The notes below the pieces were generated by a model. The model was given only the letters and a program-made list of their open reading frames with translations, had not been told where the DNA came from and made no database searches. A stretch of DNA of 64,000 bases from NCBI RefSeq assembly GCF_032444005.1, contig NC_091290.1, forward strand, positions 133,858,001 to 133,922,000. The letters run 5' to 3'. Numbering within the stretch: the stretch's first letter is position 1; every line of letters begins with the position of its first letter. The position numbers were made by a program, and so were the translations under genes. Origin of the DNA: Ranitomeya imitator (Eukaryota). Shown in pieces: positions 34,456 to 44,600 of this stretch.

Positions 34456-37400
34456 TCACACCAGAGACAGCTTCTTCATCGTCCTCCACCGGTCCTTTAT
34501 CATGATATGCGTGCGCTCCTTGAACGGATAATTATTCAGGATTTTCGTCCATTTGCCTTCACCATATTTTTCCACTCCCAACCGGATCCATTCGGTCTCT
34601 TCTGTTGACCATTTCTGCACAAAACGAAAAAAAGAAAAGTCAGCGCCTGCTGGGAGTTGTAGTGCTGCAGGTCGGCGACCCTGCAGTAGAGTATTCAGCT
34701 CGCACCACCAGCTGACCCTGGGCGATAAGCAACCCGTAATTTGAGAACGGTCACATTCACATGACAGCCCGGCCAATCAATGACGATCCTGACCGCGTGC
34801 ACATTGCACACAGTCAGGATTGGCCGTTCTGCGGTTACATGGGGCGAGTGCACAAATTTGGCTCCCTTTAACCCTTCCACCTCCGGGGCCATTTTCCAGT
34901 TTTATTTTTCCCCTATTTTATCATTTGATACGCTGGAAAAAAAGATGCGTTGAAATTGCAAAAAAAAAAGTGCAATTTCACAATAGTATTTTTTTTTTGG
35001 TTTTTATTGTGCACTATATGGTAACACAGACCGGCCATTATGATTGTCCAGGTCAGTACGAGTTTACAGATACCAAACATGTCTACTTTTTTTTTTTTTT
35101 CAAGTCATGAAAACAATTAGGAACTTCGAATAAAAAAAAAAAAAAAAAAAAAAAAAACTCGATGGACCTGAGTCATGTCAGTAAGGAGTTAAAATAAGAA
35201 CTGTCACTTTAAGTGGCCGTTGGATCACGAATCCCTTTAAGGGCAGTCTCACACGTCAAGATAATTCCGGTACCGGAAAAAAATCGGTACCGGAATTATC
35301 AGTGTCCGTGTGCCCCTACGTTTTTGTGGCACACGTGTGCCGCCCATGTGCCCACTGGGTACCACATGCACCGTGCTGGGTACTACACGTACCAGCATCT
35401 GGTGCTGAAGCCGCGATTCATATCTTCCCTGCAGCAGCGTTTGCTGTAGAGAAGATATGAATAACTGTGTTTAAAATTAAGATCTATGTGCCCCCCGCCC
35501 CCCCACCCCCTGTGCGCCCCCCGCTGTTCTGAAAATACTCACCCGGCTCCCTCGTTGGCTGTCGCTGCTTCCTGTTCTGGCCGCATCTTCTCCTGTATGC
35601 GGTCACGTGGGGCCGCTCATTTACAGTAATGAATATGCAGCTCCACCCCTATAGGTTGGCACATAGATCTTTATTTTAAACAGTATTATTCATATCTTCT
35701 CTACAGCAAACGCTGCTGCAGGGAAGATATGAATCGCGGCTTCAGCACCAGTGGGGGGGGGACAGCGCTTACTGTAGCGCAGTCTCCTGCACGGCACACG
35801 GACTGCACACGGACAACGTCCGTGTGCGGTACGTGCTTTACACGGACCCTTTGACTTTAATGGGTCCGTGTAATCCGTGCGCTCCCACGAACACTGACAT
35901 GTCTCCGTGTTTGGCACACGGAGACACGGTCCGCAAAAAATCAATGACATCTGAACAGATGCATTGATTTTTATGTGTCTACGTGTGTCAGTGGCTCCGG
36001 TACATGAGGAAACTGTCACCTCACGTACCGGAGCCACTGACGTGTGAAACCGGCCTAATTGTTCTATACGCAATCTTCTATCATAAGGGCACACATCATA
36101 TTTTCTATCCAGCGGCATATCTTAGACATAAGGGCGGCGCGGCGGCCATCTTACCTTCTTTTTAGCAGTGCTGATTGAATAGTTTGTAGATCCTGCAAAA
36201 TATAAAAATAAAAAAAAAAATTTACCACTGGTGACGGAGGAAATGTTTCCTGTGTAAAGTTTTCTTATTTAAAGGGGTTGTCCACAGGATATACAGTTTA
36301 CTAAGCTGAGATCGTCTGATCGCTTGTGCCACGCACAGCATTGCAGCCCGGCCGTGACCATTGCTGCACCACCTATAACCAGTGCTGGGCCGGTCAGGCA
36401 TTGGGTGGGAGGCATTTAACCTAACCACGTCCCAAATCTCCTGCTGGACCCTCGTGAAGTAGAATCCCTCCTTTATTACACAATTCACCAGTAAGGGAAG
36501 TACAATAGCGGCAGAGCCGGCGGCACTTACTGCTCCTGAGAAACAGCTCATCCTCGTCGCTCCAGGTTTCCGGCTCATCCGCAGGAGTCGCCCCGTCCGT
36601 GGCCGGATTGTCAGCTCTGCGGGGGAGGAACCAAACATGATATCACTGGAGGTCCGGCCTCGAATACTGCACTCATGTAACTGCTGAAACCAAGGGGGAT
36701 GTCCGGTGATCATATGACGGGTGGGGGTCCCCTTAACACTGCACACGTATGACCGCCGCTCCATCCATTCCCTATAGGGCTGCGCTCCGCTTTTTCCGGC
36801 GGCTCCATAGAGAATGAATAGAGTGCGATCCGCTTTGCAACAAAGGTAAAGACCCCCCCGCTCTGCCGGACTGCCACCGATCCGGCGAGCGGTCACAACC
36901 CAACATGGGGGCAAGGAGACTAGAGACCCCCGGGGAAAGCACTGGCAGGGGGATACCTGAAAAATGAGGCTATTTTACCATTAGAGTGTTCAATGTGTGG
37001 GAACGGGATATTTCGGGGCATAAAATAATTTTGGCAATACCAAAACAGTTACGTATACACATAATAAAATAAATATTATAAAGAATTTTATATTTGTTTT
37101 TAATTCAGAACTTTGTTTAAAAGGAACACGACGACGGCAGCAACGCAGAGCAGCGGCTCCATAAACCCGAGGGTCCCGACGTATTGTGCACCTTCATCCA
37201 TATGTGGGAAGGGATTGAAAAGGGTCGTCCGCATAAGGGGGTACGATCGCTGGGAATGTTGATGTCGGATAAAAAACAGTGGCAGGTTGGATCCATCTAT
37301 TTCTATGGGGCTGTGGGATAAAGCCCTATAGGGGATGCATGGTGAGCGCACTGCCACTCTGTTACTAATATGTATTTTTGATTTGCAACGACAACAGGCA

Positions 37401-40400
37401 TCGACTTAATGTTCCCTTTGAGCATCCGATAAAATAATAAAATGACATGTTTGGAATATAGGTCATCATGTGACTTTACAGTTTTCTCAGCCTCCATTCA
37501 GACTGGTCAGGTTCTCTCTAAAATCAACCCCAGACCTGGCGGGTAATAAGACGCGTGAAGTGCTTACAAGATTTTTCTTTTCTTCCTTGTGATGGGTGAG
37601 CTGAACAAGCTCCGGACAGGATCATTGCTGCGCTTGGGCTCCTCCTGGCTGCGCTTGGGCTCCTCCTGGCTGCGCTTGGGCTCCTCCTGGCTGCGCTTGG
37701 GCTCCTCCTGGCCGCGCTTGGGCTCCTCCTGGCCGCGCTTGGGCTCCTCCTGGCCGCGCTTGGGCTCCTCCTGGCCGCGCTTGGGCTCCTCCTGGCCGCG
37801 CTTGGGCTCCTCCTGGCCGCGCTTGGGCTCCTCCTGGCTGCGCTTGGGCTCCTCCTCGTTGCGCTTCGGCTCCTCCTCGTTGCGCTTCGGCTCCTCCTCC
37901 CTGCGCTTCGGCTCCTCCTCGCTGACGGTCTCCACTTTAACTTCCTCCTCTTCGTTTTCCTGCTGACTGTCCTGTTCCGTCACCAACTGGTGGAGAGACA
38001 CCAAACACCTCCGCTGTGCCATCTCCTGTATGATGGACGCCTCCTCTCTGGGGGAGCAAGCACGGGGGCTCTTATTGGTTTGCCTTTCAGGAGAGACCCT
38101 TTGTAGACAGGCGTCTCCCCTACAGAAGTCTGTCTCACAGAGGTGTCTGAATGTTACATCGGGGTTGTCATCTTGACAGAGTAATAAGAACTTAGATCTT
38201 ATGGCAGACAGGCTGCACGAGGGGCCGCGGTCTACGTCCGACCTGGAGGGACGAGAAGGACATACAGCTCATCAGTCCCCATTCTGTGCCTCACTAGACG
38301 GAGAGGACATCAACCAAACCAAGACAAACCTGGCTGCTTTCTTCTGTCCATGCTGCAATACCACGCACCACCTGTACACAAGGGTGGCGCCGTCTAGTAT
38401 AGAAAGCAGCCATGTTTCTCAACCCCTTTAACTATACAAGAACTCACTGAGAAGAGCTCAACCTTGATCTTAAACCCATTCCTGACAAAATGGCTACATT
38501 AGGGGCCCCCGAATACTCCAGGGTTATTCAGTCACTGTACGTACCCAGCTTCCTTTCCTTGGCTGGTGCCTTCATTGCTGTGTGATGCTGCAGTCAGACC
38601 ATGGGGTGCGGTGGTCTCGTCTTCGGGGGATGTATTTCCCAGGCTCGGCTCACGGTTTGTCTCTGGGTCGGTATCTTCCTCGGACTCTTCCTTCAGTTCT
38701 AGAAACTCTTCTTGTGCAAGCTTAAAAAAAAAAAAACAAAAAAAAAAGCACAGTGTGAATGCGGCTTTACGCCATCTCTTGCTGAGCAATTATTCCTCCC
38801 GGATCATAGAGTGACGGACCGCCGACACTTACGGTCAGTAGGAAGGAGGGAATTCTCTGGATCTTGCTCTCGAACAGGTCGTAAATCTTTTCTTTGATGG
38901 TAGACAAGGAAAAATTTGCGATCAGCGGATGCTTGACGTTCCTCTCCTGGATGATGTGCAGCAGATCCGCCCACAGCTGCTAAAAGAAGACAGACGAAAA
39001 TCTGCGCAACAGAGATGTGAAAAGTGGCCAATCCCAGGAGCAACACTCAGCTTATATCCATGGCTCCTGACAGATCCCCTCCCCCGAGGATCCGGGTGAA
39101 GCGGGCGGCCAGTACTCACTTGTGTATTTCGGCTCTTAGAAATGTACTTCGTCAGGATTTTGTTGGCTTTCTCAAACCGCTGCTTCTGTATACAGGTGAC
39201 CACGGCCTGGAAAAGAGCAACACATGAGTATCCGATGTGACACAGGACGGGCGGCCATACTCTGCGAGCACCGAGTCCGCAGCCGCGTCTTTAGGGGCCA
39301 CTTACTTACCAGCTCCTAAAAACTAGCAGGGGGACGGTGCTGTAAGAAGTAGAGGACAGAAGCGGTTTATAAATGCTTCTGTCTTCTAAGGGCTCGTGCA
39401 CGGGACCGATCTTCTCCAACGAGTGGTGTCTGTGGTTTTCATAGACTGCACTCGTACCTATGATATTCTACAGAGCTGCGGACATGTCAGATTTTTTCCC
39501 AGGTTGATTAATCAGCAGAAAAAAAAATTGGAGACCATGTTTGATTTTGATCTGAGTGTCAGATCAAAATTGACAATGCAAGTCTATGGGTCAGTGAAAA
39601 AAATAAATAAAAAAAAATAATAATTGGGACAGGAGTGCGCCGGACAGGACTGCGCGGGACAGGACTACGCCGGACAGGACTGCGGCCAGACAGGACTACG
39701 CCGGACAGGTGATAAAGAGGTTGTCCAAAGAAAACAAGTTAAGTCACTATAAGACTATTTGTTTTGCACACTCCCCCCAAAAAAATAAAAAATACCCCTT
39801 ACCGCCTCTTTCAGCATTTGCTTGTTGGCATTGATGAGATCCGCAGGGAACGACTTCTTCATCGTGTCCATGACTCTGACAGCTGATTCCAGCGGCGTGT
39901 AGCTCTCGTCTTCATCAAACGTACAGTCTGAGGATACAGGAAGAATCATTGGCTTATAGCGATCCTCACCAGGACGTACCGGGTCGGTGCCAAATCCCTC
40001 CTGCGCAGTTCCCAGGGGCGGCGAGCGGATCACCAGAAAAGTGCTGGACAAGGAACAATGACCCTGAAAGGTGAGGAGCAAGGGCCGCATTACTTACCGA
40101 GATCGTCCCCTTCTTCCACGCAGGAGAAGAGCTGCATGATGCGCAGAAGTTGTGTGTTCTCCTTCGCACTTTTTAAACGTCGCTGGATTAAAACTATTTT
40201 GAAAAAAAAAAATGGGATGAAATAAGAGACAGAAGCGCGACCGACGACATTTATGTGATTCGCTATTTTAAAGCTGAATGATTGTTAGCCCCAACTACAT
40301 GTATTTAAGTAAGAAAAACAAAAATGGCCCCAAAAGGAACCACCCCTTTAATTATGGGGGATGGAAAAAAAGGCATTATGGGAAATCCCGAGCGCTATCG

Positions 40401-41633
40401 GAGCACTTTAGCCCCTTAGATGCCACAGTCAAATGAAACCGCAGCATTTAAGGGGGATAGAAATGGAGGAAAGTGTCTCTTCTGACAGGGGGGCCAATGG
40501 CGTTATCATTATGGCCCCTGGATTAATTGAAGACCACCTGGATCTGCCTTATTTTTACACCTAAGATTGGTAATTTTACAAGACAGTGCGAAATTACAGA
40601 TAACAAAAACAATGTATTTTTTAAATAACATTCTTTTGACGCCTCTCACCATCTGTTCCAAGAACGCAAAAATAATAATACTTAAAAAAAAAAAGTAAAA
40701 TAATCTTGTAATAGTGCGCCACCTGCTGGCGACTTTCAGTAAATAAATAACATCCTGTAATAGTGCGCCACCTGCTGGCGACTTTCAGCAAATAAATAAC
40801 ATCCTGTAATAGTGCGCCACCTGCTGGCGACTTTCAGTAAATAAATAACATCCTGTAATAGTGCGCCACCTGCTGGCGACTTTCAGCAAATAAATAACAT
40901 CCTGTAATGGTGCGCCACCTGCTGGCGACTTTCAGTAAATAAATAACATCCTGTAATAGTGCGCCACCTGCTGGCGACTTTCAGTAAATAAATAACATCC
41001 TGCAATAGTGCGCCACCTGCTGGGGCCTTCGAGTGTAGCAGTTACCCGCTCCTTACGCGACACGATGTCCCGGATCTGTGCGAAGTCCTCCTTACGGCAG
41101 TTTTTGAAGGCGTCCACGTACAGATGGAAAAAGTATTCCAACACCCACTGGTTTACCAGAGGCTCCAGTCTTAGCAGGTTGCAGTCCTCGGTGCCCAACT
41201 CCATCCTGCACCCTATTAGTAAAAAAATAAGTAATTCTGCCGCGAAATGGCCCCACTTCCGGTGATGCTGTCATGTGACTTGGATGTTGACGTCGGCCAT
41301 GATGGGAAGGGCGGAAGTTGTGATTTTTATTATTATTATTTTCGCTTTTTTACGTGTAAAAATGTGCACATAATGAGATGCAAGCAGTTGCTGTATTAGA
41401 TTAGATTAGAGATACAGTTTTCGGTTCCCACATCAAACATGGCTGCTTTTTTCTTTTTTATATGTCTATTCTAATTGGTTGGTGGCCTGAGAGAACCGGC
41501 GCTAGTGATTGGATGACTGTTTTGCGAGCATCCCGCCTTTCTGAAGGCGATTGGTTGTCACCTTGGAGACCTCACCTGTGTCCATGAGCCGAGTGTCTGA
41601 GGCGTCGCTGCTACGGAAGCCGGGGGTCGTCAT
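34456..41633 (-). CDS. TERF2: Telomeric repeat-binding factor 2 (600 aa from ATG 41633, or 578 aa from ATG 41204)
   Basis: complement(join(34456-34614,36155-36192,36531-36616,37568-38242,38545-38720,38833-38979,39120-39206,39803-39927,40098-40193,41057-41212,41576-41633)), total 1803 nt, phases consistent. TRFH domain ([11 protein letters not shown]..., TPLESAV), RAP1-binding-like LSAIRSKF..., [10 protein letters not shown], Myb domain [22 protein letters not shown]...[12 protein letters not shown]. The first exon 41576-41633 is less certain (~0.55). Confidence 0.92.
35242..36056. mobile_element. MITE with internal ~90-bp inverted repeat, TERF2 last intron
   Basis: Ends GGCAGTCTCACACGTC...GACGTGTGAAACCGGCC flanked by TAA. 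Internal arms ~35400-35490 and ~35660-35750 are reverse complements. Confidence 0.7.
37627..37920 (-). repeat. Coding 21-bp tandem repeat, 14 copies, in TERF2 exon
   Basis: Unit CAG GAG GAG CCC AAG CGC (A/G)GC on the minus strand, encoding (Q/E)EEPKR(S/G/N/R) x14 in frame. Confidence 0.95.
40709..41024. repeat. 49-bp tandem array (6 full units plus a partial 7th) carrying CTCF and forkhead motifs
   Basis: Unit TAATAGTGCGCCACCTGCTGGCGACTTTCAGTAAATAAATAACATCCTG; the core CGCCACCTGCTGG starts at 40717 + 49n (n=0-6). Confidence 0.93.
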
Positions 41634-41668: not shown

Positions 41669-44600
41669 ATGGCGAACGGTGAAGGCGGCTCCAGCGAGGA
41701 GTCTGAGGCGACTTACTACAGCCTGGAAGATGTGAGGAAAAGAAACAGCGCGAAAGAGCTATGGCTGGTGATCCACGGCCGGGTGTACGACATCACACGC
41801 TTTGTGGAAGAGGTGAGGACCGGACGGCGACGGTGACTGAGGCGGGGGCGTCTGTGCGGCTTCACCCGGGGGAAAGAAGAGTGACCGTGATGTGTGCGAC
41901 TGTATCTGCACTAGAGGCGTTACAGCAGAGGAGAGCGTCCCCGGTATAATGGGGCGTCCCCGGTATATGGCCGGTATAATGGGGCGTCCCCGGTATATGG
42001 CCGGTATAATGGGGCGTCCCCGGTATATGGCCGGTATAATGGGGTGTCCCCGGTATATGGCCGGTCTCCGGTATAATGGGGCGTCCCCGGTATATGGCCG
42101 GTATAATGGGGCGTCCCCGGTATAATGGGGCGTCCCCGGTATAATGGGGCGTCCCCGGTATAATGGGGCGTCCCCGGTATAATGGGGCGTCCCCGGTATA
42201 TGGCCGGTATAATGGGGCGTCCCCGGTATATGGCCGGTATAATGGGGCGTCCCCGGTATATGGCCGGTATAATGGGGCGTCCCCGGTATATGGCCGGTCC
42301 CCGGTATAATGGGGCGTCCCCGGTATATGGCCGGTCTCCGGTATAATGGGGCGTCCCCGGTATATGGCCGGTCTCCGGTATAATGGGGCGTCCCCGGTAT
42401 ATGGCCGGTCCCCGGTATAATGGGGCGTCCCCGGTATAATGGGGCGTCCCCGGTATATGGCCGGTCTCCGGTATAATGGGGCGTCCCCGGTATATGGCCA
42501 GTCTCCACTGTAATGGGGCGTCCCCGGTATATGGCCGGTTTCCACTATAATGGGGCGTCCCCGGTATATGGCCGGTCTCCGGTATAATGGGGCGTCCCCG
42601 GTATATGGCCAGTCTCCACTGTAATGGGGCGTCCCCGGTATATGGCCGGTTTCCACTATAATGGGGCGTCCCCGGTATATGGCCGGTCTCCGGTATAATG
42701 GGGCGTCCCCGGTATATGGCCAGTCTCCACTGTAATGGGGCGTCCCCGGTATATGGCCGGTTTCCACTATAATGGGGCGTCCCCGGTATATGGCCGGTTT
42801 CCACTGTAATGGGGCGTCCCCGGTATATGGCCGGTTTCCACTGTAATGGGGCGTCCCCGGTATATGGCCGGTTTCCACTGTAATGGGGCGTCCCCGGTAT
42901 ATGGCCGGTTTCCACTATGTGAAAGAGGATCTGTTACCAGAAAGATCCTAATTACATATGTAGGGGCGGCTGGAATACTGTGTCCGGTTTTGGGCACCAC
43001 ATTTAAAAAAAAAAATGCATCAACAAAGTGTAGTAAGTTCAGAGAAGAGCCACCAGGATGGTGACCGGTCTGCAAACCATGTCCTGTGAAGAACGGTTAC
43101 AGGATCTGGGAATGTTTAGCTTGCAAAAAAGGAGACTTACTATGTGTCTACAAATATCTCTAGGGCTGTCACATTGTAGAAGGATGATCTTTATTCTCAT
43201 TTGCACAATGAAAGACTACAACCCCTGGCAATAATTATGGAATCGCCGGCCTTGGAGGATGTTCATTCAGTTGTTTAATTTTGTAGAAAAAAATCATATC
43301 ACAGACATGGCACAAAACTACAGTCATTACAAATGGCACTTTCTGGCTTTAAGAAACACCAAAAGAAATCAAGAACATAAATGTGGTAGTCAGTGATGGT
43401 TACTTTTTTTTAACCAAGCATTGATAAAAAATTATAGAGTCATGAAAAACAAACAAACAAAAAAACCCTTCAACACATCACTAGTATTTTGTTGCACCAC
43501 CTCTGGCTTTTCTAACAGCTTGCAGTCTCTGAGGTCTGGACTTAATGAGTGTCACACAGGACTCTCCATCAATCTGGCTCCAACTTTCTCTGATTGCTGT
43601 TGCCAGATCAGCTTTGCAGGTTGGATTCCTGTCATGGACCATTTTCTTCAACTTCCATCAAAGATTTTCCATTGGATTGAGATCCGGACTATTTGCAGCC
43701 ATGACATTGACCTTATGTGTCTATTTTCAAGGAATTTTTTCACAGTTTTTGCTCTATAGCAGGATGCATTATCATCTTGAAAAATGATTTCATCATCCCC
43801 AAACATCCCTTCAATTGATGGGATAAGAAAAGTGTCCAAAATATCAACATAAACTTGTGCATTTACTGAAGATGTAATGGCAGCCATCTCCCCAGTGCCT
43901 TTACCTGACATGCAGCCCCATATCATCAATGACTGTGGAAATTTGCATGTTCTCGTCAGGCAGTCATCTTTATAAATCTCATTGGAACGGCACCAAACAA
44001 AACTTCCAGCATCATCACCTTGCCCAATGCAGATTCGCGATTAATCACTGAATATGACTTTCATCCAGTCATCCACAGTCCACGATTGCTTTTCCTTAGC
44101 CCATTGTAACCTTTTTCTGTTTAGGTGTTAATGATGGCTTTCGCTTAGCTTTCCTGTATGTAAATCCCATTTCCTTCAGGCGGTTTCTTACAGTTCGGTC
44201 ACAGACGTTGACTCCAGTTTCCTCCCATTCGTTCCTCATTTGTTTTGTTGTGCATTTCCTGTTTTGGAGACATATTGCTTTAAGTTTCCTGTCTTGAAGC
44301 TTTGATGTCTTCCTTGGTCTACCAGTATGTTTGCCTTTAACAACATTCCCATGTTGTTTGTATTTGGTCCAGATTTTAGACACAGCTGACTGTGAACAAC
44401 CAACATCTTTTGCAACATTGCGTGATGATTTACCCTCTTGTAAGAGTTTGATAATCCTCTCCTTTGTTTCAATTGACATCTCTCGTGTTGGAACCATGAT
44501 TCATGTCAGTCCACTTGGTGCAACAGCTCTCCGAGGTGTGATCACTCCTTTTTAGATGCAGACTAGCGAGCAGATCTTATTTGATGCAGGTGTTATTTTT

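What the first reader, a model, noticed from the sequence alone, without database searches (positions are those of the whole stretch)
37627..37920. TERF2 hinge carries a 14x7-aa repeat that toggles ATM/ATR-type SQ sites
Seen: (E/Q)EEPKR(R/N/S/G) x14, in frame, right after [14 protein letters not shown]. That segment resembles the human TRF2 TIN2-binding segment MTISRLVLEEDSQ (from memory). Four junctions read SQEE and six read GQEE, differing by a single AGC/GGC base. Established: S/T-Q, especially SQE, is the ATM/ATR consensus, and the TRF2 hinge recruits RAP1/TIN2 and dampens DNA-damage signalling. Inference: a lineage-specific 98-aa charged disordered insert acting as a VNTR-tunable phospho-cluster in shelterin. 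I do not know this repeat from other TRF2 proteins.
Basis: partly seen in the sequence, partly recalled or inferred. Interest (0 to 1): 0.75.

Follow-up and report, generated by a model that had tools for sequence, protein, structure and literature searches.

The report
Coding minisatellite in frog TERF2 hinge
The telomere-protecting protein TRF2 of the mimic poison frog Ranitomeya imitator carries a real, transcribed, genus-specific 14-copy 7-amino-acid repeat in its flexible hinge; it most likely just lengthens a disordered linker, and nothing here shows it is a tunable ATM/ATR phosphorylation switch.

Summary
A 21-bp unit is repeated 14.2 times (37627-37924, 97% match). It lies in frame on the minus strand inside a 675-nt exon (38242..37568). 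RNA-like contigs from three studies confirm both splice junctions of that exon.

The gene is TERF2 of Ranitomeya imitator. The exon translation is identical to residues 260-483 of RefSeq XP_069595173.1. The array sits between the conserved TIN2-binding motif and the basic patch, iDDR and Myb module.

It is genus-specific:
- Dendrobates tinctorius, Phyllobates terribilis and Anomaloglossus have one unit or none.
- R. variabilis has 8 units and no SQ.
- A second R. imitator assembly has 15 units (3 SQ, 8 GQ) against 14 here (4 SQ, 6 GQ).

AlphaFold2 predicts the array to be disordered (pLDDT 32-42).

The ATM/ATR phospho-cluster part is not:
- The SQ motifs are a by-product of the unit junction (AGC|CAG).
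- They are absent from the sister species.
- Each follows Lys-Arg.

TRF2 hinges of turtles, axolotl and other frogs carry their own unrelated tandem repeats. This is one more case of a known kind. The side observation is more useful: the spacing from the TIN2-binding motif to the iDDR is about 55 residues in most tetrapods and about 149 here.

The parts
37627..37920 (-). 14 x 21-bp in-frame tandem array encoding (E/Q)EEPKR(R/N/S/G). It corresponds to residues 367-464 of RefSeq TRF2 isoform X2. TRF extends the match to 37924.
37568..38242 (-). 675-nt TERF2 hinge exon (1 base + 224 codons + 2 bases). It holds the Rap1-binding-motif region, the TIN2-binding motif, the array and the basic patch RKKRK.
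   Evidence: Splice joints 36616|37568 and 38242|38545 in contigs of X3, X4 and X7. The translation is identical to P0018 residues 260-483.
37957..37998 (-). TIN2-binding motif [14 protein letters not shown], ending in the conserved DSQ (exon residues 82-95; coordinates computed from the exon frame).
   Evidence: Alignment A1. Motif found in 86 TRF2 entries. Myler et al. 2021, PMC8653790.
38122..38211 (-). Rap1-binding-motif-like segment [30 protein letters not shown]. Two predicted helices; approximate coordinates.
   Evidence: Profile of A1 matches the TRF2 peptide of 3k6g_D at profile positions 270-307, E 1.1e-5. AF2 helices at 270-298. Pfam alone found nothing in the exon.
37571..37626 (-). 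Conserved tail after the array: [18 protein letters not shown]. The basic patch is a putative NLS (inference).
36530..36616 (-). Next exon, encoding the iDDR-type acidic tryptophan motif ...[15 protein letters not shown].
   Evidence: Joint 36616|37568 and contig end at 36530. iDDR definition in PMC8653790.
34459..34614 (-). Last coding exon, the Myb/telobox domain [22 protein letters not shown]...[11 protein letters not shown]. The 5' boundary is approximate.
38545..38720 (-). Upstream exon: end of TRFH and start of the hinge ([16 protein letters not shown]...GKEAG). The 5' boundary is approximate.
41058..41204 (-). First coding exon of the RefSeq model (MELGTEDCN...IRDIVS), the start of the TRFH domain. 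Coordinates computed from the open frame.

Best explanation
This is a coding minisatellite. An ancestral single EEPKRS heptad sits in the disordered TRF2 hinge between the TIN2-binding motif and the basic patch, iDDR and Myb module. It was amplified by replication slippage or unequal exchange of its 21-bp unit in the genus Ranitomeya.

A first expansion to about 3-4 EEEPKR(R/N/S) units probably predates the R. imitator / R. variabilis split. Each species then amplified its own derived unit: QEEPKR(G/S) x10-11 in R. imitator and (E/K)EELKR(S/N) x5 in R. variabilis.

The product is a 98-residue, proline-punctuated, nearly neutral polyampholyte (32 E, 29 K+R, 14 P, net charge -3) that stays unfolded. 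It lengthens the tether from the TIN2-binding motif to the iDDR tryptophan from about 55 to 149 residues.

It is most likely a tolerated, near-neutral, still mutating linker expansion. The SQ motifs are incidental unit-junction products.

Shown: the repeat, its transcription and retention in mRNA-like contigs, its position, its genus restriction, the difference between two assemblies, and the predicted disorder.

Inferred: the slippage mechanism, the two-phase history, and neutrality.
For: - Array and unit structure: blocks of identical units, with 6 G-type then 4 S-type differing by one base.
- Splice junctions are confirmed and no array-skipping joint is seen in three RNA-like runs.
- The translation is identical to RefSeq R. 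imitator TRF2.
- Orthologs: D. tinctorius has one unit (KEEPKRS-NEP). P. terribilis reads EEEPQRPKRS. Anomaloglossus has none. R. variabilis has 8 units and 0 SQ. The second R. imitator assembly has 15 units with a different S/G pattern.
- AF2 with a 20-sequence alignment gives array pLDDT 32-42 and no secondary structure, while TRFH and Myb are confident.
- Other TRF2 hinges carry unrelated lineage-specific tandem repeats: turtles 14 aa x3-8, Leptobrachium 15 aa x8, Mixophyes 8 aa x5, plus axolotl, Gastrophryne and Pelodytes.
- X3 carries a synonymous unit-type variant at 37846 that X4 lacks.
Against: - The TBM-to-iDDR spacing is otherwise narrow: 49-63 residues, once 70, in 75 of 86 TRF2 entries. 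A near-tripling may therefore not be functionally silent.
- The array formally satisfies the SQ/TQ cluster definition, including the stringent 3-in-50 version.
- The length difference rests on two assemblies only. One is of unknown quality, and no read-level copy-number check was possible.
- No functional data exist.
Confidence: 0.7

Rival explanations
1. The SQEE units form an ATM/ATR-targeted SQ cluster next to the TIN2-binding motif, and copy number and the S/G state tune DNA-damage-dependent regulation of shelterin.
For: - Five SQ motifs lie within 107 residues, three of them within 15. This meets the SCD definition.
- The location is in a protein that controls ATM signalling.
- SQ count differs between two assemblies of the species.
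Against: - There is no SQ in the R. variabilis array or in single-unit relatives, so there is no conservation even within the genus.
- SQ exists only through the AGC|CAG unit junction.
- Lys-Arg precedes each Ser, which is unfavourable for ATM (from memory, Kim et al. 1999).
- The S and G units are arranged in blocks.
- No phosphorylation evidence exists.
Confidence: 0.08
2. An adaptive or at least functional linker change. The longer, blocky-charged spacer alters the reach or orientation of the iDDR and Myb relative to the TRFH/TIN2 core, or alters TRF2 condensation on telomeric DNA, independent of phosphorylation.
For: - The TBM-to-iDDR spacing is tightly held near 55 residues across tetrapods, and is broken only in Ranitomeya, Gastrophryne and axolotl.
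- The array is retained in mRNA.
- Expanded arrays are kept in two Ranitomeya species.
Against: - Unit sequences diverge freely between the two species (P to L, E to Q or K), and copy number varies. This looks unconstrained.
- A narrow spacing elsewhere may only reflect the lack of a slippage-prone template.
- No functional data exist.
Confidence: 0.18
3. An artefact: the array is an assembly error, or it is removed from the mature mRNA.
For: k=31 contigs cannot cross the 294-bp array, so copy number is unverified by reads.
Against: - RNA-like contigs from three studies run from both flanking exon parts into the array (37568-37656; 37870/37891-38240).
- Array words are held at high depth, and there is no skipping joint.
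- An independent assembly has 15 units, and the sister species has 8.
Confidence: 0.03

Closest known systems
Vertebrate TRF2 (TERF2) hinge with Rap1-binding motif, TIN2-binding motif and iDDR (Myler et al. 2021, PMC8653790)
   Same: It has the same domain order: TRFH, RBM-like helices, TBM ending in DSQ, basic patch, acidic-Trp iDDR, then Myb. It shares the CYB5B neighbour and COG8/PDF synteny. It is annotated as TRF2 in RefSeq.
   Different: A 98-residue heptad array is inserted between the TBM and the basic patch. The TBM-to-iDDR spacing is 149 residues instead of about 55. There is no N-terminal basic/GAR domain, as in most non-mammalian TRF2. Pfam's RBM model does not score on this exon alone.
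Other lineage-specific tandem repeats in TRF2 hinges (found here in database proteins; I know of no description in the literature)
   Same: They are in-frame short-unit arrays in the disordered hinge, with species-variable copy number. Examples are turtles PDSVEVAKQPPAAA x3-8, Leptobrachium VETSPHQKRASSRED x8, Mixophyes TPSTSKTV x5, an axolotl TSKDPEPNQEQ-like repeat, and Gastrophryne SPQDRR-type repeats plus a TBM duplication.
   Different: The unit sequences are unrelated. The turtle, Mixophyes and Leptobrachium arrays lie before the TBM. Only the axolotl and Gastrophryne arrays share the post-TBM site.
SQ/TQ cluster domains of ATM/ATR substrates (definition quoted in PMC4705472)
   Same: At least 3 SQ within 100 (and within 50) residues, in a disordered region.
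   Different: The motifs are not conserved in orthologs. They are generated by a repeat junction and are preceded by Lys-Arg. Phosphorylation is unknown.
Coding minisatellites / protein VNTRs in disordered linkers
   Same: The unit length is a multiple of three. Units are near-identical and arranged in blocks. Copy number and variant order differ between individuals and between sister species.
   Different: This one lies in a core shelterin subunit, in a segment whose length is otherwise nearly fixed across tetrapods.

Membership tests
TRF2 (TERF2) ortholog | TRFH dimerisation domain and C-terminal Myb/telobox | tested here: met
   Window ORFs align to TRF2. P0018 carries PF08558 and PF00249. 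The A1 profile hits TRF2 TRFH and Myb structures at E 1e-110 and 1e-36. AF2 models both domains with confidence.
TRF2 (TERF2) ortholog | Hinge motifs specific to TRF2: Rap1-binding motif, TIN2-binding motif, acidic-Trp iDDR upstream of Myb | tested here: met
   TBM and iDDR columns are conserved in A1. The RBM peptide 3k6g_D is matched by the profile. The RBM is weaker here: Pfam found nothing on the exon alone.
TRF2 (TERF2) ortholog | Conserved gene neighbourhood | tested here: met
   PDF-like and COG8-like ORFs lie downstream on the same strand. A Cyt-b5 gene lies head-to-head in three frog assemblies. The human 16q22 gene order is from memory.
SQ/TQ cluster domain (ATM/ATR target region) | At least 3 S/TQ within 100 residues | tested here: met
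   SQ at exon residues 92, 135, 184, 191 and 198. Definition from PMC4705472.
SQ/TQ cluster domain (ATM/ATR target region) | Cluster conserved in orthologs | tested here: not met
   R. variabilis has 0 SQ in the array. D. tinctorius, P. terribilis and Anomaloglossus have 0. The second R. imitator assembly has 3 against 4 here.
SQ/TQ cluster domain (ATM/ATR target region) | Damage-dependent phosphorylation by ATM/ATR | not testable with these tools
   There are no phosphoproteomic data. The Lys-Arg at -2/-1 is unfavourable according to Kim et al. 1999 (from memory, not retrieved; searches found nothing).
Coding minisatellite / VNTR | Head-to-tail near-identical units with a length that is a multiple of 3, in an expressed exon | tested here: met
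Coding minisatellite / VNTR | Copy-number variation among individuals | tested here: inconclusive
   There are 14 units in the window and RefSeq against 15 in CAJ0930557.1 of GCA_958301615.1, with a different S/G order. That is only two assemblies. The read contigs cannot count copies.
Intrinsically disordered linker | No predicted structure, low-complexity charged and Pro-rich composition | tested here: met
   pLDDT is 32-42 and DSSP shows only coil over residues 367-464. Composition: 32 E, 15 R, 14 K, 14 P, 10 Q.

The most novel reading that the evidence does not exclude
The Ranitomeya imitator array is a polymorphic, ATM/ATR-phosphorylated (or otherwise kinase-phosphorylated) SQ cluster placed directly after the TIN2-binding motif. 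Allele-specific SQ number and linker length would then change shelterin assembly or damage signalling at telomeres, giving a natural allelic series in a core end-protection protein.
Probability: 0.07. Interest if true: 0.7.

Novelty: new member of a known kind. Interest (0 to 1): 0.3.

Why it matters
In itself this is an ordinary coding minisatellite in a disordered linker, and the protein is already in RefSeq.

Its value is as a natural experiment. In most tetrapods about 55 residues separate the TRF2 TIN2-binding motif from the iDDR/Myb module. Ranitomeya offers 55-like relatives (one unit in Dendrobates), 107 (R. variabilis) and 149-156 (R. imitator alleles). These could be used to ask whether hinge length or charge matters for TIN2 binding, MRN/53BP1 suppression or telomeric DNA binding.

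It also shows that TRF2 hinges repeatedly acquire lineage-specific tandem repeats (frogs, axolotl, turtles). As far as I could find, this has not been described.

Tried and rejected
- Pfam scan of the exon: no family.
- phmmer of the exon and of its non-repeat part against PDB sequences: only low-complexity noise, or nothing.
- The search for homologous proteins with the 224-aa exon: only EEPKR-like low-complexity ORFs from ENA metagenomes (P0001-P0004). No TRF2 came up because of the length filter.
- Fetching DNA of the second R. imitator assembly, R. variabilis and D. tinctorius, to compare arrays at nucleotide level. The genes are on record, but no DNA was served because the sample files are too large or only the longest isoform is indexed.
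- Literature searches for a description of TRF2 hinge repeats and for the ATM flanking-residue rule found nothing usable. The ATM rule is therefore cited from memory only.
- Copy-number verification by reads is impossible with k=31 contigs.
I used the exon by reference and the RefSeq proteins returned by the tools.

Full report
**What is there**

Tandem Repeats Finder reports a single array at 37627-37924: period 21, 14.2 copies, 97% matches and no indels. On the minus strand it is in frame in an open frame that runs from an AG acceptor (38244-43) to a GT donor (37567-66). This defines an exon of 675 nt, 38242..37568, made of 1 base + 224 codons + 2 bases.

The 14 units, read unit by unit, are:
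- three GAG GAG GAG CCG AAG CGC AGG/AAC units ([21 protein letters not shown]);
- one GAG GAG GAG CCC AAG CGC AGC unit (EEEPKRS);
- six identical CAG GAG GAG CCC AAG CGC GGC units (QEEPKRG);
- four identical CAG GAG GAG CCC AAG CGC AGC units (QEEPKRS).

The unit occurs nowhere else in the window.

**The gene**

The minus strand carries a complete TERF2 gene:
- TRFH exons ([15 protein letters not shown]...);
- the hinge exon;
- an exon encoding ...[10 protein letters not shown];
- a Myb exon ([22 protein letters not shown]...[11 protein letters not shown]).

PDF-like and COG8-like ORFs lie downstream.

A HMMER search with the non-repeat half of the exon found frog TRF2 proteins. A second search with one of them returned about 220 TRF2 entries with source names.

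The exon translation is identical to residues 260-483 of XP_069595173.1, telomeric repeat-binding factor 2 isoform X2 of Ranitomeya imitator. The organism is therefore R. imitator, and the array is already present in a RefSeq model as residues 367-464.

**Transcription and splicing**

Runs that hold about 0.5-0.6 of the sampled words of a 1.2-kb stretch fit exon-only content, because the exon is 56% of that stretch.

Contigs of X3, X4 and X7 come from three studies of the same organism label. Laid on 36300-39400, they show these joints, all with GT..AG ends on the minus strand:
- 36616|37568;
- 38242|38545 (listed as 38240|38543, "cut +2");
- 38979|39120.

The contigs run from both flanks into the array (37568-37656 and 37870/37891-38240) and stop inside it. 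This is expected of k=31 contigs on a 294-bp repeat. No joint skips the array. The exon and the retention of the array in mRNA-like contigs are confirmed, but the copy number is not.

X3 carries 37846 G>C, which is a synonymous CCC>CCG on the coding strand. It turns unit 4 into the CCG type. X4 lacks this variant.

**Position in the protein**

In a 20-species alignment (A1)...[17 protein letters not shown] aligns with ...KRMTISRLVLEQDSQ of mammals. L345, V346, D350 and S351 are at least 90% conserved. This is the TIN2-binding motif described for all vertebrate TRF2 (PMC8653790).

- Upstream, [30 protein letters not shown] occupies the Rap1-binding-motif columns. The A1 profile matches the TRF2 peptide of 3k6g_D there (E 1.1e-5), and AF2 predicts helices at 270-298.
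- Downstream of the array come a conserved ...VRxLFSSPxTxKKRK basic patch and the acidic-tryptophan iDDR motif, which lies in the next exon.

The array therefore sits between the TBM, with its acidic tail, and the basic patch, iDDR and Myb module.

**Distribution of the array**

| Species / assembly | Sequence at the site | Units | SQ | GQ |
|---|---|---|---|---|
| Anomaloglossus baeobatrachus | ...ETVSKKDPQLPGCSKEPVRR | none | 0 | 0 |
| Phyllobates terribilis | EEEPQRPKRS-NES | one, with a small insert | 0 | 0 |
| Dendrobates tinctorius | KEEPKRS-NEP | 1 | 0 | 0 |
| Ranitomeya variabilis | EEPKR x3, then EELKR x5 | 8 | 0 | 0 |
| R. imitator, window and RefSeq | see unit list above | 14 | 4 | 6 |
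| R. imitator, CAJ0930557.1 (GCA_958301615.1) | adds two E>K changes | 15 | 3 | 8 |

- The expansion is specific to Ranitomeya.
- Both species share 3-4 EEEPKR(R/N/S) units at the 5' end, and each has amplified a different derived unit. From this I infer a two-phase history.
- The blocks of identical units in R. imitator point to recent slippage or unequal exchange, or to ongoing homogenisation.

**Structure**

AlphaFold2 was run on P0018 with alignment A1. It gives confident TRFH (residues 10-213) and Myb (529-573) domains and moderately confident RBM helices. Across residues 367-464 the pLDDT is 32-42 with no secondary structure.

The array composition is 32 E, 15 R, 14 K, 14 P, 10 Q, 6 G, 5 S and 2 N, with net charge -3. 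With a proline every seven residues, this is a disordered polyampholyte and cannot form a single alpha-helix.

**The ATM/ATR idea**

The exon has SQ at residues 92 (the conserved DSQ of the TBM), 135, 184, 191 and 198. This meets the formal SCD definition of at least 3 S/TQ in 100 residues, and the stringent 3-in-50 version (PMC4705472).

Four points weigh against the idea:
1. The array SQs exist only because an AGC-ending unit abuts a CAG-starting unit.
2. They are absent from the R. variabilis array and from all single-unit relatives.
3. S and G units lie in blocks.
4. Every Ser follows Lys-Arg. From my memory of Kim et al. 1999 (J Biol Chem 274:37538), basic residues near the Ser are negative determinants for ATM. 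I could not retrieve this paper.

SQEE also fits the S-x-x-E CK2 pattern (own knowledge). Any phosphorylation, if present, need not be damage-dependent. The phospho-cluster reading is therefore neither excluded nor supported.

**Context: TRF2 hinges often hold tandem repeats**

A simple self-comparison of the 125 retrieved proteins, together with direct reading, shows unrelated arrays in other lineages:

| Lineage | Unit | Copies | Position |
|---|---|---|---|
| Turtles | PDSVEVAKQPPAAA | 3-8, varying by species | between TRFH and RBM |
| Leptobrachium | VETSPHQKRASSRED | 8 | before the TBM |
| Mixophyes | TPSTSKTV | 5 | before the TBM |
| Axolotl | TSKDPEPNQEQ-like | about 4 | after the TBM |
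| Gastrophryne | SPQDRR-type, plus a duplicated TBM | several | after the TBM |
| Pelodytes | duplicated TBM | 2 | TBM region |

I found no paper describing any of these.

By contrast, the distance from the end of the TBM to the iDDR tryptophan is narrow:
- It is 49-63 residues, once 70, in 75 of the 86 entries in which both motifs were found by pattern. The median is 55.
- The entries include isoforms and many turtles, so they are not independent.
- The only exceptions are Ranitomeya (107, and 149-156), Gastrophryne (155) and axolotl (136).

**Verdict**

The lineage-specific, disordered and VNTR-like character is supported. The ATM/ATR "toggle" remains speculation, and comparative evidence counts against it.

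The most likely reading is a tolerated, still evolving linker expansion (0.7). A length- or charge-dependent function is a minority rival (0.18). The SQ phospho-cluster is unlikely (0.08), and an artefact is very unlikely (0.03).

**Limits**
- There is no read-level copy count.
- The relatives' DNA could not be obtained.
- The length and S/G difference within the species rests on two assemblies only.
I used exon references and database proteins.

Noticed in passing
window 38047-38242 (-): RefSeq isoform X3 (P0014, 513 aa) lacks 65 residues (SDVDRG...CSPR). That is the whole Rap1-binding-motif region, removed through an internal acceptor (ctcccccag|A at 38048/38047) inside the hinge exon. Equivalent short isoforms are predicted in many anurans and turtles (about 430 against about 495 aa). 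The contigs laid show only the long form.
   Followed up: partly
proteins P0061-P0098 etc.: Turtle TRF2 proteins carry a 14-aa tandem repeat (PDSVEVAKQPPAAA) of 3 to 8 copies, depending on species, between TRFH and the Rap1-binding motif. Leptobrachium (15 aa x8), Mixophyes (8 aa x5), axolotl and Gastrophryne have their own hinge repeats. I found no description of these in the literature.
   Followed up: partly
TRF2 orthologs: The spacing from the TIN2-binding motif to the iDDR tryptophan is 49-63 residues (median 55) in most tetrapod TRF2 entries. The only large departures are in three amphibian lineages: Ranitomeya, Gastrophryne and axolotl.
   Followed up: partly
P0001, P0003, P0004: ORFs from ENA metagenome contigs contain runs such as [22 protein letters not shown]. 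They are not TRF2 and are probably a GC-rich simple repeat translated by chance. Their origin is unknown.
   Followed up: no
window 41095-41349 (-): The D. tinctorius TRF2 models start with [13 protein letters not shown]... upstream of the MEFSAEG start. In this window the [16 protein letters not shown] is in a different frame from MELGTEDCN, so R. imitator TRF2 most likely starts at the Met at 41204-41202, as in RefSeq.
   Followed up: no
window 41762-42933: A long tandem repeat lies just beyond the TERF2 5' end. It is open in several minus-strand frames ([28 protein letters not shown]...). I did not examine it.
   Followed up: no
window 36568, 36580, 38857: There are single-base differences between the window and the RNA-like contigs of other studies, in TERF2 exons. 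For example, 36568 T>G appears in all three runs. These are ordinary polymorphism or an assembly-individual allele.
   Followed up: no
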